A stretch of 64,000 nucleotides of DNA, taken from the IMG/VR virus record IMGVR_UViG_3300036766_000194, positions 235,876 through 299,875 of that record; one strand, given 5' to 3'. This document shows positions 730 to 64,000 of this stretch, in pieces (positions within the stretch are counted from its first letter, which is position 1; each line of letters starts with the position of its first letter). A model generated the notes under the pieces. That model was given only the letters and a program-made list of their open reading frames with translations, did not search any database and was not told the origin of the DNA. The position numbers and the translations under genes are program-made.

Positions 730-1743
730 ATGCAGATTCCTATTCCTCCTTCTGGAGTTATACCTAACCACATTTTTGAAACCTATTGGAATTTTGCCAG
801 TGAGCGTCAACGTGTGTTTTGGAAACGCAAGAATGGTGAACCAGGTCCTTGGAGTGAAGATCCTATTCTGCAAACCTATAAATTTACCAATACTTACCGG
901 GTACTGGATAGAGTCAGCCAGTACCTATTGAGGAATATCATCGTCTATCCGGAGTGTAGCGATTTGGATTGTACAGTCCACTCTTCTCCTGAGAACACAA
1001 TCTTCCGTATTATGTTCTTTAAGCTATTCAATCGTCCAGAAACTTGGGAAATGCTCAGCAGTGAATTAGGCGAAGAACCCCATATAGATAATTTTAACTT
1101 TACCATCTACGATGAAACTCTTACATCTGCTCAAGATCGTGGAGAGAAAATTTATTCCAACGCATACATGATGACAGCTGCGGGTAGTAACGGGGATCGT
1201 CGTCACCGGATGTATTTGCGATTGTATGAAAAGATGTTTCATGAGGATAAAATCCAGGACAAGATTTTAGAAGCCACTTCACTAGAGGCTCTCTACAATC
1301 TTATCCGTACATATCGGACCATGGGACCATTCCTCGCGATGCAGTACGCAATTGACCTCAATTATTCTCCGTTCGTAAATTTCTTAGAGACAGACTTCAT
1401 CATAGCCGGACCGGGAGCTAGAAGAGGAATCCTAAAATGTTTTGATAGCATAGGAAACCACAATGAAGCTGATGTTATAAGATGGGTTCAAGAAACTCAA
1501 GATGAACAATTTATGTCGCGAGGGTTAGAATTTAAAAAGATAGGAAATCGTCCTCTACAGTTAATTGATTGCCAGTCGTTATTTTGTGAGGTGGATAAAT
1601 TTACAAGAGCAAGTAACCCTGAAATCCAGGTTGAGACAGGATCCGGGGATGCTCAAAAACGAGCAAGGATTAAACAGAACTTCAAGGAAAACAGTAATAA
1701 GATTGAGTATGTGTTTCCCTCCAAATGGGGAGTTAAGATATGA
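730..1743 (+). CDS. aGPT-Pplase1 / 5-hmdU DNA kinase helical-domain protein (thymidine hypermodification)
   Basis: Motifs YWNFASERQRVFWKR, PWSEDPILQTYKFTNTYRVLDRVSQYL, GPFLAMQYAIDLNYS, AGPGARRG and LIDCQSLFCEVDKF are typical of the family. ATG 730 is preferred because the called TTG at 640 lies inside the 83-bp repeat. Confidence 0.85.
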   Translation: MQIPIPPSGVIPNHIFETYWNFASERQRVFWKRKNGEPGPWSEDPILQTYKFTNTYRVLDRVSQYLLRNIIVYPECSDLDCTVHSSPENTIFRIMFFKLFNRPETWEMLSSELGEEPHIDNFNFTIYDETLTSAQDRGEKIYSNAYMMTAAGSNGDRRHRMYLRLYEKMFHEDKIQDKILEATSLEALYNLIRTYRTMGPFLAMQYAIDLNYSPFVNFLETDFIIAGPGARRGILKCFDSIGNHNEADVIRWVQETQDEQFMSRGLEFKKIGNRPLQLIDCQSLFCEVDKFTRASNPEIQVETGSGDAQKRARIKQNFKENSNKIEYVFPSKWGVKI

Positions 1744-58891: not shown

Positions 58892-60070
58892 TCAGTCATT
58901 TACTCTCCCGTAAATCCTGTCATTGTATCTGTTTTTGAATACCGGATCCCACTCATCCATCATTACTGGGCAACCTGTTTCTCTAAAGTGATTCTGTTTT
59001 TCTGCTTTCACCCCAATATCTGTGGGATTAAATTCTAATAATAAATGAGCAGGAAGATTTTCTTTTCTGGCGTCCCAAAATTCAGAAAAATCATTCTCTG
59101 GCCAATCTGACTCTGCCTTCTTAATACGGTTGTATAGCATGTCTGTATAAACATTAGGATAACGACGGTTGGGGCGGTACCAACTCTTATAGGTACAGAA
59201 CGTGCTCTCTAAGGTGAAGTAGGAGACATCATGGAAGTAAGGCTTATCCTTCATACGTTCTTTTGCTTCCTTCAAAAGCTCTGCAGCTTCCTTCTCTAAC
59301 CAAGATAGCATCTCGGGAGTATACTTCCCGTCAAACCTAGTGGTGTTTGAATCGTGCCAATCCAAGTCATCCCTTCCTAAGACTTTTGCCAAACCATTAC
59401 GATGAGATTTACTGCCGCTCATATCATCTAGAAACAGCTGATCACAATCTATGTTAAAACGCATGGCTCGTAGATACTCTAGATACGAGAAGGAACTCAA
59501 TCTTCCAAAACTGTAAAAGTTCTTTCTGACCTCTTCCCAGGCTTTACGGAAATTTTGGTAAGGATCAGAAGTTCCCATGAAAGTTGAAAAATATTCTTCC
59601 TGACTATCCTTACAATGATGTTTGTACTCAGTCACAGCTTTGATGAAGTTCCTCTTATTTTTAACCCTGTCCATGTCAAATGCTAGACGTTTCCATTCAG
59701 CATTGAACCAAGTGGTGAGAGCAGAAATATCCAGGGTAGATAAATCAGGGAAGTGATTGAAGATTATCTTAGAGGTTAAAGGATTTTGTGTATGCCCGTT
59801 TAAGTAGGCAAACCAGAGTCGTTGCTCCGCATCCCAATTGTATTTCTTATAAAGAAATGGCATTAGTAGGTAGACCAGGCCAGGGTGGAGATGATATTTG
59901 CAATGAAATTCGTAGAAGCGGAGGAAGACTTCGCGGCGGTAACGAGGATGACGGAAGTCCATCCCGTATTCAAGATCCGTAACTTCGGGCACGTAGTTTA
60001 GGTCAGACCAACGTCCTATAGTTGTGTGAGAAACATCGGGATAAAAATTAAGCATGAGGCCTACTCCCAA
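58892..60070 (-). CDS. amino acid:DNA transferase (aGPT-Pplase2 / AADT)
   Basis: DFR.P.YRREVFLRFY...HPG.VY, WFAYLNG.TQN, FGRLSSFSYLEYL, GS.SHRNGL, FTLES..CTYK...RYP..Y.D. Confidence 0.85.
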   Translation of the reverse strand: MGVGLMLNFYPDVSHTTIGRWSDLNYVPEVTDLEYGMDFRHPRYRREVFLRFYEFHCKYHLHPGLVYLLMPFLYKKYNWDAEQRLWFAYLNGHTQNPLTSKIIFNHFPDLSTLDISALTTWFNAEWKRLAFDMDRVKNKRNFIKAVTEYKHHCKDSQEEYFSTFMGTSDPYQNFRKAWEEVRKNFYSFGRLSSFSYLEYLRAMRFNIDCDQLFLDDMSGSKSHRNGLAKVLGRDDLDWHDSNTTRFDGKYTPEMLSWLEKEAAELLKEAKERMKDKPYFHDVSYFTLESTFCTYKSWYRPNRRYPNVYTDMLYNRIKKAESDWPENDFSEFWDARKENLPAHLLLEFNPTDIGVKAEKQNHFRETGCPVMMDEWDPVFKNRYNDRIYGRVND

Positions 60071-60962
60071 TTATCCAGTATAAACTCTTGTCATTCAGAT
60101 ACGGACGAAACTCGTCCAGATGGTCTTTCATGTAGCACCACGTTTTCGCTTCATATCTTGGATGGAATTTCAAACCATCATAGTTAAATTCTTTCAGATC
60201 TTCATACGAGGTGTAGCCCGAATCTATCAAGTCATGTTCAATGAAATTGTAGGGAAGAGGGAGGGCATCCCCAGTCACCTTGCGAATTATGTCTAGACGT
60301 TCATTTGTCCAACGTTGGTGCTTTGCTATGTTACCCATGATGCGGAATAAGATAATGTTTTTCAGGGAAGCGGGACGGAACCTTGCAATGCCATAAAGAA
60401 TAGATGTAAGAGAATTACAACTACCCGCAGGGATTAGAAGATTTTCAATGTGGGAGGGTATGTTGCGAACTTGTTCACTTCCCACTCTATGAAAGCCCTC
60501 CACCCGCGCCGGGTCATTAACTTTGTGTTCTACTGTGATGTTGGTTTCTATATGAAGCCATCCACGTTCGTTGGCAAATTTCTTTGCCTGTGCGTTGAGA
60601 TTGCCCGCGTAGCCAGGATTAACGTGTTGTATGACGGCACCACTTGCTTTGGCCGATTCGATGCTCTCATATTTAGAGGGAGCATCGGTATTCTTCCCGC
60701 CTGTAAATTGAACACACTTCATCCCGTAGTGCTTGGCGCAAGCCGCAACCATTGCGTGTTGGGGAGACCCGCCAACGGCTCCTGATGAAACCCCAGGGAA
60801 GGGACGTTCGTTAAAAAGCCAGATCAATTGTCGGAATTTGCTGCCGTTGTTGACCCCGTCAGGACTGTATAAGTCGTCTCTTTTGAACCACATTCCGCCA
60901 ATGCTTTGAACGGGAGTAAGGTCCAGTAAGTAGTCTTCCCATTTGGCTATGATGTTGTTCAT
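60048..60962 (-). CDS. PLP-dependent enzyme (fold II) of thymidine hypermodification, probable decarboxylase
   Basis: LTPVQ....WFKRDDL......GSK.RQ, SPQ, IPAGSCNS...IL.G, HPRYEAK..., LYWI; coupled to the AADT gene. Confidence 0.8.
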   Translation of the reverse strand: MNNIIAKWEDYLLDLTPVQSIGGMWFKRDDLYSPDGVNNGSKFRQLIWLFNERPFPGVSSGAVGGSPQHAMVAACAKHYGMKCVQFTGGKNTDAPSKYESIESAKASGAVIQHVNPGYAGNLNAQAKKFANERGWLHIETNITVEHKVNDPARVEGFHRVGSEQVRNIPSHIENLLIPAGSCNSLTSILYGIARFRPASLKNIILFRIMGNIAKHQRWTNERLDIIRKVTGDALPLPYNFIEHDLIDSGYTSYEDLKEFNYDGLKFHPRYEAKTWCYMKDHLDEFRPYLNDKSLYWIIGSRPHA

Positions 60963-61122: not shown

Positions 61123-63531
61123 ATGCCCACTATTTACCCCTATACATTTCCAGCATATCGAAATCTTCGTTACTGGAAAATTGGAGACACCGACCACGAT
61201 CCTATTGCTCGTATCATTCAACAAAGAGGTACTTCCAACCCTGAACTTTTTTATGTTCTTCCTCCTTGGTTTGATCTTCCTTTTGGAGATAAACATCTTC
61301 ATGAACATCTGATTCGTAATTGTGGAGTCTTGCGAGTTCCCCCAGGCGAGATCAAGGATCCGTATCCTGGTTCTATTGAATTAAAACCTACTGCTGAGGA
61401 ATGGTTTACTCATCCTAGTTGGGTTTCAGATACAGCATTTATTGATTTTTTGTCTCGTGAGATAAATGGACTACGTTTCGGTAAAGTCCGAGAAGACACA
61501 TTTCCTTTGCGGAAAGAGCAAGAAGGCTGCGTAAGCCGTTCTCTTACAGCATTCGAAGAAGGTGCAAAACAAATTCTCTGGGATTTGAAGCCGCGCTTCG
61601 GAAAAACTATTACTGCTTGCGAACTGGCGCGGCGCGCAAAGTACCAGAAGGTGCTTGTTCTCACTTGGCACCCGCAAGTGAAAGATGAATGGGAAAAACC
61701 AGTCAGACGGCACGTAAACTTTGTGGACCATGAGTTGGTTGTATTGGCTGAAGAAGACCGGACCCAACCCGGTTTTGAGAAACCCACCTTTGTCTTCTTA
61801 TCCTTTCAGCTTCTTACGAACCTCAAAAACGTTGAGATTTTGGCGTGGGTCAAGTCGGTGTCCTGGGACCTTATCATTCTGGACGAAGCCGATTATGGGA
61901 TGACGACCTCCAACTCTCTTCAAGTTTTGAACAGTGTACAATACGCCCGTAGGCTGGATCTCACCGGGACCGCCTTCCGCATAACACAAGCATATGATCA
62001 CACCGAACGTTGGACCTTGATTGATGAACGCAAGGCCCACCCGGAACTGCCGAAAGTTGAAATTTATCTGCTGAATTTGGCGGCGAAGGTTGCTGAGGAC
62101 GTCGAACTTAACAAGTTCACCACAGAGGAAGGATACACGGCGCTCAAGTTCTTCAGTGATTCAAAATGGGTCCGTCATTTCCTTAACTGGCTGGCGGCCT
62201 CTAATGACAGGAACTATGGACTGAACGGCCCGTTGATTGAAGGTGGGGATCATATGCTTTGGAAACTCCCCGATGTCCGTAGCTGTGACACAGTAAAGAA
62301 GGAACTAGAAAAGCATCTTCGTTTTCGTGATTATGTGCCGATCCCTGCATATGATGATAACCGGGGGATGGGGGATGACACTCTTTTTGAAGCAAAGCAA
62401 CTCATCGCGGGGGCTGAACTTGCTGGTGAGAAAAGCATCATTCTCACCTGCGGGAAACTGCTGCGTGGAGTAACCGTTCCCGAACTTACCGACATTCTAT
62501 TTCTTGACGACGGCAGTTCGGCGGCGGAATACATCCAAACCGGGTATAGATCACAGAGTCCCTGGGACAGTAAACACAAACCCGTTTGTCGCTGGTGGGA
62601 CTTTAACCCCAACCGGGGATTGACTGTCTTCGATCGTCTTCGGGATGAATATTGTGCACCGGGTGGACAGGATGTTCAAGAGTTTCTTGATTGCTTCAAT
62701 GTATTTGACTTCTTTGGCACAGGTTATAGGAAACTTGATGGAGTTGAATTTCAACGGCAATTGGATTCTTTGTTTGCCTTGGAAGCTACACGCGGCTTCC
62801 GTGCGAGTTCCTTGGCTAATCTTGAAGAGATCTCTAATCTCACCGCCGATGACTTGGCTATTCTTAGTGGGCTGCCAGAAGGGAATTTTGTAGATCCAAC
62901 TCTGTCCTTGAACGAAGCCGAAGTTGAAAATGGGAAAAACTTCGAGTCGCGTACTCAGCAAGAGAAAGAGAAAGAACAGAAGGAAAAAGTCGAGAACTTT
63001 GAAAAACAGTTGGAGACTTTGTGTCAGCAACTTCCCGTTCTTTTGTATTTCGGGAAACGAGGCGGCAATTTCCGCTCATTGATTACGGAACTTGACTCTG
63101 TTCTTGTTAGGGATTCTATGGGGTTTAACGTGGCCTTCATACTCCGTCTTTTGAATAGCGGGGTTTTGCGTGAGGAGAGGCTAGACCGAGCGGTACGTCG
63201 CTTTAAGGAAACCCCCACCGCTTTGTTGCCTTACATCACGAAAGTTAGTGGGGAAGTTGTAACTCCTCAAGGAGTTGCTGAGGATATGTTAGCGATGTTA
63301 GACCCCGCCGTTTGGTCTGACGACACGGTGTTTGTTGACCCTGTTTGCAAATCTGGGGTGTTTCTGGTTGGTTGTTATGAGAGGATGGTAAAGGCGGGAC
63401 AGACTCATGACCAAGCAATCTCTAGGCTTCGGGCGGTTGTTCCTGAAAACAGCCTATTCTTCAAAGTTACTTGTCGAACTTTAGAACTCTTTTGTGGGAT
63501 TGAACATCCCGAAAGTATTATGATCTTATGA
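61123..63531 (+). CDS. T5orf172/GIY-YIG-like nuclease + SF2 (ResIII) helicase + N-terminal part of an adenine methyltransferase
   Basis: IY.Y...KIGDT...RI.QQ...EWF; KPRFGKT, DEAD, LTGT, RGVTVP, YIQ..YR.Q; EVVTP and DPVCKSGVFL (motif I). Confidence 0.8.
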   Translation: MPTIYPYTFPAYRNLRYWKIGDTDHDPIARIIQQRGTSNPELFYVLPPWFDLPFGDKHLHEHLIRNCGVLRVPPGEIKDPYPGSIELKPTAEEWFTHPSWVSDTAFIDFLSREINGLRFGKVREDTFPLRKEQEGCVSRSLTAFEEGAKQILWDLKPRFGKTITACELARRAKYQKVLVLTWHPQVKDEWEKPVRRHVNFVDHELVVLAEEDRTQPGFEKPTFVFLSFQLLTNLKNVEILAWVKSVSWDLIILDEADYGMTTSNSLQVLNSVQYARRLDLTGTAFRITQAYDHTERWTLIDERKAHPELPKVEIYLLNLAAKVAEDVELNKFTTEEGYTALKFFSDSKWVRHFLNWLAASNDRNYGLNGPLIEGGDHMLWKLPDVRSCDTVKKELEKHLRFRDYVPIPAYDDNRGMGDDTLFEAKQLIAGAELAGEKSIILTCGKLLRGVTVPELTDILFLDDGSSAAEYIQTGYRSQSPWDSKHKPVCRWWDFNPNRGLTVFDRLRDEYCAPGGQDVQEFLDCFNVFDFFGTGYRKLDGVEFQRQLDSLFALEATRGFRASSLANLEEISNLTADDLAILSGLPEGNFVDPTLSLNEAEVENGKNFESRTQQEKEKEQKEKVENFEKQLETLCQQLPVLLYFGKRGGNFRSLITELDSVLVRDSMGFNVAFILRLLNSGVLREERLDRAVRRFKETPTALLPYITKVSGEVVTPQGVAEDMLAMLDPAVWSDDTVFVDPVCKSGVFLVGCYERMVKAGQTHDQAISRLRAVVPENSLFFKVTCRTLELFCGIEHPESIMIL

Positions 63532-64000
63532 AGTTGAAGGACTCAATCCGAGAACAACTGGCCACGCCGCGTAAGGTGATTGCGGTTGGAAATCCTCCGG
63601 TATCAGATCGGGTACCACCATCGCCTCGTACTCTTTATCACAAGTTCATAGAGACGGCTCAAAAGTTCGCAGATGAAATTCTCTTTGTGATCCCCTCCCG
63701 TTGGTACGCCGGGGGCAAGGGATTAGACGGATTTCGCAAAGCCACGCTCACCGAAGGCCACGTATACCAATTACGTGACTTCCGGGATTCTCAGACCATC
63801 TTCCCAATTATTTCTGGCGGCGTTTGTTTCTTTCACTGGAAGAAGGACTACACGGGGCTGTGCAACTGGTCCAATGACCAAGGGAACAAAGTTCAGCGTG
63901 ATCTGGCTGAATACGATGTTTTGGTGCGGGACTTAACCGGGCGGGAAATTCTCAAGAAGGTATTGGCGAAACACCCAGGACCGTTCTTAAACTCAACGAC
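63528..64000 (+). CDS. Eco57I-like methyltransferase/specificity subunit (runs off the window; not in the ORF track); motif IV reads NPPV
   Basis: ATGA-coupled. Reads MKLKDS...VGNPPVSDRVPPSPRTLYHKFIE...IPSRWYAGGKGLDGFR...IFP.ISGGVCFF.W. Confidence 0.8.
   Translation, partial: MKLKDSIREQLATPRKVIAVGNPPVSDRVPPSPRTLYHKFIETAQKFADEILFVIPSRWYAGGKGLDGFRKATLTEGHVYQLRDFRDSQTIFPIISGGVCFFHWKKDYTGLCNWSNDQGNKVQRDLAEYDVLVRDLTGREILKKVLAKHPGPFLNST

What the first reader, a model, noticed from the sequence alone, without database searches (positions are those of the whole stretch)
63591..63640. Catalytic NPPY motif scrambled by three compensating single-base insertions
Seen: AAT CCT CCG GTA TCA GAT CGG GTA CCA CCA TCG CCT CGT ACT reads NPPVSDRVPPSPRT. 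Deleting one G from CCGG, one G from CGGG and one C from GCCT gives NPPYQIGTTIARTLYHKF, the expected family pattern. The net +3 keeps the frame but removes the catalytic Tyr. Inference: selective inactivation of methylation while retaining the DNA-recognition subunit; alternatively, three sequencing errors.
Basis: partly seen in the sequence, partly recalled or inferred. Interest (0 to 1): 0.6.

Follow-up and report, generated by a model that had tools for sequence, protein, structure and literature searches.

The report
Frameshift pair erases methylase catalytic tyrosine
In a 300-kb phage from sediment, one of two tandem "half-methyltransferase" genes carries a real, naturally circulating +1/-1 frameshift pair that rewrites seven codons and removes the catalytic tyrosine, probably leaving a protein that still folds and docks to its nuclease-helicase partner but no longer methylates DNA.

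Summary
The sequence reads NPPVSDRVPPSPRT exactly as reported, and it is not a sequencing error. A 15-kb contig at depth 33 (run X1), a contig from a second study (X2) and an ENA assembly (L004) all carry it.

A metagenome contig (L009) holds the unshifted allele of the same gene, NPPY-QIGYHH-SPRT. Against it the window has one inserted G (63600) and one deleted T (63621^63622), so net length change is 0. Seven codons, YQIGYHH, are read as VSDRVPP. The other two proposed insertions are not supported.

The gene (A) wraps round the circular 299.7-kb phage genome. It encodes only motif IV plus the target-recognition half of an Eco57I/M.TaqI-like N6-adenine methyltransferase. The SAM-binding half is fused to the end of the upstream ORF (T5orf172 nuclease-like domain + SF2 helicase). 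A tandem paralogue (B) keeps NPPY.

The shifted patch occurs on two gene backgrounds, and one background carries either patch, so the allele has persisted and recombined.

Best reading: a methylation-dead but otherwise intact recognition half of a split restriction-modification-type enzyme. Whether selection keeps it, or it is merely tolerated, is open.

The parts
61123..63531 (+). ORF1 (802 aa). It combines an N-terminal T5orf172/GIY-YIG-like nuclease domain (aa 1 to about 126), an SF2 helicase (Walker A GKT at aa 160, DEAD at 254, TGT at 281, QTGYR at 472) and the C-terminal SAM-binding lobe of the methyltransferase.
   Evidence: - Pfam ResIII E 8e-9 and N6_Mtase at aa 707-762.
- Homologues are about 840-aa T5orf172+MUG113+ResIII proteins named GIY-YIG nuclease or restriction endonuclease.
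- The N-terminal conserved residues are kept.
- Helicase motifs located.
63205..63528 (+). Methyltransferase N-lobe at the end of ORF1 (aa about 695-802), with motif X (VVTPQGV) and motif I (DPVCKSGVFL).
   Evidence: Motif I matches the family consensus DPxCKxGVFL, with K in 99% of 100 full-length homologues. In the complex model, residues 735-739 pair with residues 16-20 of the A-type protein.
63528..63531 (+). ATGA overlap: the start codon of gene A overlaps the stop codon of ORF1 (frames differ by one base). No Shine-Dalgarno sequence precedes A, whereas B has GAGGA 8 nt upstream of its ATG.
   Evidence: Direct reading. The same junction is present in L009 and L004.
63528..64000 (+). Gene A (333 aa in all). 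It runs off the window and, because the record is circular (127-bp terminal repeat), ends at base 656 of the record. It encodes motif IV, the rest of the catalytic domain and the target-recognition domain.
   Evidence: Genome junction rebuilt. Pfam Eco57I. PADLOC MTase_II on the L004 allele of A and on B. The model of the L004 allele (P0003) matches CamA, M.TaqI, BrxX and M.BseCI.
63591..63602 (+). Remnant of motif IV: NPPV in place of NPPY.
   Evidence: NPPY in 118 of 119 homologues.
63600..63600 (+). Inserted G (CCG|G|TAT; equally placed at 63599).
   Evidence: Alignment with the unshifted allele in L009.
63600..63620 (+). Seven frame-shifted codons, GTA TCA GAT CGG GTA CCA CCA = VSDRVPP. 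One base to the right, the same bases read YQIGYHH.
   Evidence: L009 reads YQIGYHH in frame.
63621..63622 (+). Site of the compensating one-base deletion. L009 has CAT CAT TCG; the window has CAC CA|T CG. The frame is restored from TCG CCT CGT ACT (SPRT).

Best explanation
Shown:
- The stretch is a genuine natural allele of gene A.
- Gene A is the first of two tandem genes that each encode the C-terminal half of a gamma-class (Eco57I/M.TaqI-like) N6-adenine DNA methyltransferase: strand beta-4 with motif IV, the rest of the catalytic domain, and the target-recognition domain.
- The N-terminal SAM-binding half is fused to the end of the upstream ORF1. ORF1 also carries a T5orf172/GIY-YIG-like nuclease domain and an SF2 helicase.
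- Compared with the unshifted allele found in another metagenome, A has a one-base insertion in the Tyr codon of NPPY and a one-base deletion 21 bases downstream. Seven codons (YQIGYHH) are therefore read as VSDRVPP and the rest of the 333-codon frame is untouched.

Inferred:
- Without the aromatic residue that holds the flipped adenine, and without the near-invariant Gln, the ORF1+A assembly cannot methylate, or does so very poorly.
- A still folds and still completes the Rossmann sheet with ORF1. It can therefore act as a recognition-only partner of the nuclease-helicase, or as an inert competitor of the NPPY-bearing paralogue B for the single ORF1 lobe.
- The phage genome carries three 5-hmdU DNA kinase homologues next to and near the locus. 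It probably hypermodifies its thymidines and may not need methylation for self-protection. That would make loss of methylation cheap or even useful.
For: The allele is real:
- A 15,084-nt contig at depth 33 covers 62400-63708 with no difference (X1).
- A 124-nt contig from another study is identical over 63570-63693 (X2).
- ENA contig L004 carries the identical patch.

The two events:
- L009 has ...CCGCCG-TACCAGATCGGGTACCATCATTCGCCTCGTACT = NPPYQIGYHHSPRT directly after a 99.9% identical ORF1.
- Either single event alone would truncate the protein at 49 or 40 aa.

Split enzyme:
- ORF1 ends with the family's motif I.
- In bacteria, relatives of ORF1 sit beside about 506-aa methyltransferases of A's family. 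A fused helicase-methylase of 1179 aa also exists.
- The PADLOC REase_MTase_IIG profile matches ORF1 at positions 148-311 and B at 1015-1112, in the same order.
- Complex model of ORF1 685-802 with the L004 allele of A: ipSAE 0.79, best of 3 controls 0.03. That mark was reached by 51 of 78 solved complexes and 2 of 108 mismatched pairs. The runs agree in at least 95% of contacts and partner pLDDT is at least 87. Strand 735-739 pairs with residues 16-20.

The rest of A is intact:
- 63 of 98 family-conserved columns are kept, against 70 in B; most of the extra losses lie in the patch.
- Model pLDDT 84, with a fold like CamA and M.TaqI.
- dN/dS among the modules is 0.1-0.4.

Persistence:
- The patch is identical on two different downstream modules (window and L004).
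- The L004 module occurs with either patch. L004 and L009/L006 differ at 7 positions, all within 88 nt, and at none in the other roughly 880 nt.

Role of the Tyr:
- PglX Y381A (PMC4365076) and BrxX Y511A (PMC11842806) abolish function or methylation.

Hypermodification context.
Against: - No assay or RNA data: no RNA run holds the stretch.
- Selection after the frameshift cannot be measured. All NPPV copies found are identical in the patch and its flanks, and differences further downstream are module swaps.
- In BrxX the Tyr-to-Ala change also abolished DNA binding (PMC11842806), so recognition may be impaired too.
- The loop after NPPY is already unusual in the whole phage clade. It has 10 variable residues and lacks the DGG...SA.P of bacterial relatives, so constraint on this region may be relaxed in general.
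- The complex score may partly reflect the model's memory of intact methyltransferase folds (caveat stated).
- Hypermodification of the phage DNA is inferred from gene content only.
Confidence: 0.6

Rival explanations
1. Tolerated decay of a redundant paralogue. After the tandem duplication, B (NPPY) supplies the function. A's catalytic loop was hit by an indel and later by a second one, and the allele drifts. A does nothing useful.
For: - B is intact and has its own Shine-Dalgarno sequence.
- The loop is hypervariable in the clade.
- No divergence since the frameshift is available to show constraint.
- An NPPY allele of A still circulates.
Against: - Either single indel truncates A at 40-49 aa. 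Under pure neutrality, a precisely compensating second indel within 21 bases that then spreads to at least three data sets and two gene backgrounds is unlikely.
- More than 300 downstream codons are open in both NPPV-bearing genes, with family-conserved residues kept.
- Gene conversion between A and B is evident from blocks of 100% identity, yet it has not overwritten the patch.
Confidence: 0.28
2. The NPPV protein is still an active methyltransferase. The rewritten loop supplies another way to hold the adenine.
For: The clade's loop already departs from the family consensus while NPPY-bearing members presumably work. No assay has been done.
Against: - The aromatic residue is present in 118 of 119 homologues and Gln in 99%.
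- Tyr-to-Ala changes abolish activity in PglX and BrxX (PMC4365076, PMC11842806).
- No aromatic residue exists in VSDRVPP.
- The model is disordered at residues 26-29.
Confidence: 0.07
3. One reading: three independent one-base insertions (net +3) in an ancestor reading NPPYQIGTTIARTLYHKF.
For: The arithmetic works, and the first insertion is real.
Against: - L009 keeps CGGG and GCCT and shows a one-base deletion instead.
- Loop length equals that of B and of relatives.
- No homologue has QIGTTIART.
- Two events are more parsimonious than three.
Confidence: 0.02
4. Sequencing or assembly error.
For: The gene lies at the contig end, and A and B share repeats that break the assembly graph.
Against: - The patch lies in unique sequence, inside a 15-kb contig at depth 33 with no difference.
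- It recurs in a second study and in an ENA MEGAHIT assembly.
Confidence: 0.01

Closest known systems
Bacterial two-gene systems: an approximately 506-aa Eco57I-type (PF07669) N6-adenine methyltransferase next to an approximately 850-aa T5orf172/GIY-YIG nuclease + ResIII helicase ('restriction endonuclease'); in organisation like Type III Mod/Res
   Same: Both protein families are homologous to the phage genes (B versus the methylases, 35-41% identity, E about 1e-56 to 1e-65; ORF1 versus the nuclease-helicases, 24-28% identity, E down to 1e-54). They are adjacent in bacteria.
   Different: - In the phage, the methylase is cut before motif IV.
- Its N-lobe is fused to the nuclease-helicase.
- The C-half is duplicated in tandem, and one copy lacks the catalytic Tyr.
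- The nuclease is GIY-YIG-like and N-terminal, not the C-terminal PD-(D/E)xK of classical Type III Res (from general knowledge).
Single-chain nuclease-helicase-methylase-TRD enzymes (Type ISP such as LlaGI/LlaBIII; PADLOC profile REase_MTase_IIG PDLC03626; fused relative P0171, 1179 aa)
   Same: Same order of modules, helicase then methylase then recognition domain. ORF1 and B hit the PADLOC profile collinearly.
   Different: Here there are two polypeptides instead of one, with alternative C-halves. Type ISP enzymes use an Mrr-type nuclease (from general knowledge). No sequence match to solved Type ISP chains was seen.
M.TaqI, CamA, M.BseCI, BrxX/PglX (gamma-class N6-adenine methyltransferases with NPPY and a C-terminal recognition domain)
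   Same: Fold of the model of the A-type protein: Foldseek E 4e-10 to 1e-6, TM 0.5-0.58 by query. Motif IV position matches.
   Different: A lacks the first three strands of the Rossmann fold and motif I, which lie in ORF1. It also lacks the Tyr.
Natural split DNA methyltransferases such as M.AquI and M.EcoHK31I (two polypeptides forming one C5 enzyme; recalled from general knowledge, not tested here)
   Same: One catalytic domain is assembled from two gene products.
   Different: Those are C5-cytosine enzymes, not fused to a nuclease-helicase, and have no tandem alternative halves.

Membership tests
Eco57I-type N6-adenine DNA methyltransferase (Pfam PF07669; gamma class) | Significant match to the family profile | tested here: met
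   - Window part of A: PF07669 E 1.8e-8, 35.1 bits against cut-off 25.3.
- PADLOC MTase_II: 4.9e-22 for the L004 allele of A and 6.9e-33 for B.
Eco57I-type N6-adenine DNA methyltransferase (Pfam PF07669; gamma class) | Catalytic motif IV (N/D)PP(Y/F/W) | tested here: not met
   A reads NPPV. 118 of 119 homologues read NPPY. B, L009 and P0004 read NPPY.
Eco57I-type N6-adenine DNA methyltransferase (Pfam PF07669; gamma class) | SAM-binding motif I in the same polypeptide | tested here: not met
   Motif I (DPVCKSGVFL) lies in ORF1, not in A or B. It is supplied in trans according to the complex model.
Eco57I-type N6-adenine DNA methyltransferase (Pfam PF07669; gamma class) | M.TaqI-like fold with a C-terminal recognition domain | tested here: met
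   Model pLDDT 84.4. Foldseek hits to CamA, M.TaqI, BrxX and M.BseCI at probability 1.00.
Eco57I-type N6-adenine DNA methyltransferase (Pfam PF07669; gamma class) | Methyl transfer to adenine N6 | not testable with these tools
   Needs an enzyme assay or methylome data.
Helicase-dependent restriction-modification enzyme (Type III-like / Type ISP-like) | Nuclease domain with conserved residues | tested here: inconclusive
   Pfam gives no hit on ORF1 aa 1-126. However, the alignment with T5orf172-bearing homologues shows the conserved IYxY, KIGxT, R, H and EWF positions kept.
Helicase-dependent restriction-modification enzyme (Type III-like / Type ISP-like) | SF2 helicase motifs | tested here: met
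   ResIII E 8e-9. GKT, DEAD, TGT and QTGYR are present.
Helicase-dependent restriction-modification enzyme (Type III-like / Type ISP-like) | Methylase/recognition module physically coupled to the nuclease-helicase | tested here: met
   The N-lobe is fused to ORF1. Docking of the C-half is predicted at 0.79 against 0.03 for the best control. This is a model, not a measurement.
Helicase-dependent restriction-modification enzyme (Type III-like / Type ISP-like) | ATP-dependent, site-directed DNA cleavage | not testable with these tools
   Needs biochemistry.

The most novel reading that the evidence does not exclude
A hypermodified jumbo phage keeps a methylation-dead recognition half on purpose. 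Docked to the nuclease-helicase, it would turn a restriction-modification enzyme into a restriction-only weapon against unmodified host or rival DNA, which it cannot protect by methylation. The phage's own DNA would be shielded by thymidine hypermodification. Live and dead patches, and recognition modules, would be shuffled between strains by short-tract recombination.
Probability: 0.15. Interest if true: 0.7.

Novelty: new variant of a known kind. Interest (0 to 1): 0.45.

Why it matters
- It is a clean natural example of a compensated frameshift that removes one catalytic function while sparing the rest of the protein. Both the before and after alleles are recovered from the environment.
- It exposes an unusual layout of a restriction-modification-type enzyme in a phage. 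The methyltransferase is split inside its Rossmann fold. One half is fused to a nuclease-helicase. The other half is present as two exchangeable genes.
- If the dead half is functional, it would show how a virus can uncouple DNA recognition from methylation.
- If it is not, the locus is still a useful natural test case for how split methyltransferases assemble.

Tried and rejected
- Sequencing error: rejected.
- Three-insertion model: rejected by L009.
- Degenerate motif I in ORF1 (K where other methylases have G): rejected, because K is the family consensus in 99% of homologues.
- Small downstream N-lobe ORF (154-157 aa) as the natural partner of B: not supported. It has the CGxG type of motif I, which belongs to another family.
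- Recurrent natural splits suggested by about 320-aa homologues starting just before NPPY: the two checked (P0007, P0009) are genes cut by contig ends.
- Reading the old frame by double ribosomal frameshifting: rejected on sequence grounds. There is no slippery run at CCG-G or CCA-T; this is inference only.
- A -1 frameshift fusing ORF1 to A: the A frame is open for only 8 codons upstream and has no slippery heptamer; the ATGA overlap is the simpler reading.
- Searches that found nothing useful: no sequence match of B to solved structures; NCBIfam gave nothing for A or B; IMG/VR scans with the loop pattern, with ORF1 and with P0003 gave no close relative other than the window's own record.
- dN/dS after the frameshift could not be measured, because the NPPV copies are identical around the patch.

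Full report
**Where the window lies.** The window is the last 64 kb of a 299,875-bp IMG/VR virus record (window = record 235876-299875). The record has a 127-bp direct terminal repeat and is rated 100% complete, so it is a circular assembly of 299,748 bp. The gene that holds the finding therefore runs off the window and continues at the start of the record.

**The observation.** Window 63591-63632 reads NPPVSDRVPPSPRT, as reported. It lies in an open frame that starts at 63528. I call this gene A. It is 333 aa long and ends at record base 656. The window part matches Pfam Eco57I (PF07669) above the curated cut-off. One base to the right, 63601-63621 reads YQIGYHH.

**The allele is real.**
- Logan contigs of run X1 include a 15,084-nt contig at depth 33 that covers 62400-63708 with no difference and no gap. 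X1 may be the source sample.
- Run X2, from another study, has a 124-nt contig identical over 63570-63693.
- ENA contig L004 (ERZ27247960, 34 kb, MEGAHIT) carries the same patch.
- X2 also holds a variant that shares the 30 bases up to CCG and then continues TAC AAC AAC GGT..., which reads NPPYNNG.

**What actually happened.** A metagenome scan found L009 (Ga0315268_10051777). It has an ORF1 that differs from the window's at 2 of 2,409 bases. Directly after it, the same gene reads ...AATCCGCCG-TACCAGATCGGGTACCATCATTCGCCTCGTACT = NPPY QIGYHH SPRT LYHKF.

Against L009, the window shows:
- one extra G (CCG|G|TAT, 63600);
- one missing T (CATTCG to CATCG, 63621^63622).

Seven codons are read out of frame and the frame is then restored. 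The loop has 10 residues in A, in B and in the close relatives, so the net change is 0. No homologue has QIGTTIART. Either indel alone would end the protein at 49 or 40 residues.

**Local pattern of differences.**
- Window versus L009: 4 substitutions and 2 indels lie in 63596-63644, against 2 substitutions in the 2.4 kb upstream. All four substitutions are synonymous in the NPPY frame.
- L004 (NPPV) versus L009 plus its continuation L006 (NPPY): 7 differences, all within 88 nt around the patch, and none in the remaining roughly 880 nt of the gene.
- Window versus L004: identical from 63477 to 63682, then strongly divergent, because they carry a different downstream module.

So the NPPV patch sits on two gene backgrounds, and one background carries either patch. 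This is the signature of short-tract recombination, and of an allele that has lasted.

**What the gene is.** Gene A has a tandem paralogue B at record bases 664-1668 (334 aa). B reads NPPY QKGAGRLSTT LYHKF. At the DNA level, A and B are a mosaic of blocks of 100% identity and strongly diverged blocks.

A search with B found over 4,000 relatives. Most are about 500-aa Eco57I-type methyltransferases in which NPPY lies near residue 187. NPPY is present in 118 of 119 and Q follows in 99%. A and B therefore lack the first 165 or so residues, which form the SAM-binding lobe.

That lobe is found at the end of the upstream ORF1 (61123-63531, 802 aa). ORF1 residues about 695-802 carry motif X and motif I, DPVCKSGVFL. 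This is the family's own consensus, with K in 99% of homologues. The stop codon of ORF1 overlaps the start of A (ATGA). The same junction is seen in L009 and L004.

A structure model of the A-type protein (pLDDT 84.4, low only at residues 1-8 and in the patch at 26-29) matches CamA, M.TaqI, BrxX and M.BseCI.

A complex model of ORF1 685-802 with the A-type protein P0003 gave these results:
- ipSAE 0.79, against 0.03 for the best of three controls;
- that mark was reached by 51 of 78 solved complexes and 2 of 108 mismatched pairs;
- the runs agree in at least 95% of contacts, and partner pLDDT is at least 87;
- ORF1 strand 735-739 pairs with residues 16-20 of the partner, which is the beta-1/beta-4 contact expected for a Rossmann fold cut between strands 3 and 4.

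The model supports binding but does not show it, and it may draw on memory of intact methyltransferases.

**The partner, ORF1.** Homologues of ORF1 are about 840-aa proteins with T5orf172 and MUG113 (GIY-YIG-type) domains plus a ResIII helicase. Sources name them GIY-YIG nuclease or restriction endonuclease.
- ORF1 keeps the conserved positions of the N-terminal domain, although Pfam itself gives no hit there.
- It has helicase motifs GKT, DEAD, TGT and QTGYR.
- In bacteria, these proteins sit next to about 506-aa methyltransferases of A's family.
- A fused helicase-methylase of 1,179 aa exists.
- A PADLOC profile for a fused restriction-methylase enzyme matches ORF1 and B collinearly.

The phage locus is thus a restriction-modification-type enzyme of Type III-like or Type ISP-like organisation. 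Its methylase is split, and its recognition half is duplicated.

**State of gene A apart from the patch.**
- A keeps 63 of 98 family-conserved columns and B keeps 70. Most of A's extra losses are Y, Q and loop residues.
- dN/dS among the modules is 0.1-0.4, with saturated dS between the N-terminal modules of A and B. Both start regions have therefore long been under purifying selection, and the split is old.
- This does not measure constraint since the frameshift, because all NPPV copies are identical around the patch.

**Consequence.** The aromatic residue of motif IV holds the flipped adenine. PglX Y381A lost function (PMC4365076). BrxX Y511A lost methylation and defence, and also DNA binding (PMC11842806). 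I therefore infer that ORF1+A does not methylate. Whether it still recognises DNA is less certain.

The loop after NPPY is already atypical in the whole phage clade. It has ten variable residues and no DGG...SA.P. This fits either diversifying change or relaxed constraint.

**Context.** The genome has three 5-hmdU DNA kinase homologues (PF18723). One lies right after the locus. A PLP-dependent enzyme lies just upstream of ORF1. This suggests thymidine hypermodification of the phage DNA, inferred from gene content only. It makes a restriction-only use of the dead half conceivable.

**Verdict.**
- The mechanism is one insertion plus one deletion, not three insertions.
- Sequencing error is excluded.
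- The most likely state is a methylation-dead, otherwise intact half-enzyme that still docks to ORF1.
- Whether selection maintains it (about 0.4 within my 0.6) or it is only tolerated (0.28) cannot be decided with these data.

Noticed in passing
record C1:664-1668 (L002:664-1668), just beyond the window end: Tandem paralogue B of gene A (334 aa, NPPY kept, own GAGGA ribosome-binding site). A and B are a mosaic of 100% identical DNA blocks and saturated blocks, suggesting repeated gene conversion.
   Followed up: yes
record C1:118-212 (gene A) and C1:1133-1227 (gene B); L004:1491-1585; L006:1130-1224: A 75-nt segment flanked by 10-nt inverted repeats (ACTCAACGAC / GTCGTTGAGT) is inverted in the B-type genes of L004 and L006 relative to the window's A and B. 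There is 1 mismatch in 75 nt. The reading frame stays open in both orientations and gives a different 25-residue stretch.
   Followed up: partly
record C1:1665-2129 (+); L004:2023-2496 (+); L004:3374-3772 (-): Small stand-alone ORFs (131-157 aa) encode only a methyltransferase N-lobe (FGEVFT..., E.sCG.GAFL) with no motif IV. They belong to a different family from the ORF1 lobe. Their partner is unknown.
   Followed up: partly
window 769-1629 (+); record C1:2153-2986 (-); C1:5735-6601 (+); window 60048-60962 (-): Three 5-hmdU DNA kinase homologues (PF18723, E 3e-99 to 1e-24) and a PLP-dependent enzyme flank the locus. The phage probably hypermodifies thymidine.
   Followed up: partly
L007:1945-3864 (-), IMGVR_UViG_3300033562_001962: In an unrelated AT-rich phage, a homologous methylase gene ends after about 280 aa. 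It is followed by two tandem alternative C-terminal modules (164 and 154 aa). This is another split with duplicated recognition parts.
   Followed up: no
L005:273-1256 and run X2 contig beyond window 63599: There are further loop alleles in the same phage population: NPPY QIGAHQNSRT (P0004) and NPPY NNGMGSSGK. The ten residues after NPPY are hypervariable here, whereas bacterial relatives keep Q..DGG.G.SA.P.
   Followed up: partly
window 63874-64000 = record C1:1-127: The assembly's 127-bp terminal repeat lies inside gene A, so gene callers miss A in this record. That is why A itself was absent from the protein database hits.
   Followed up: yes
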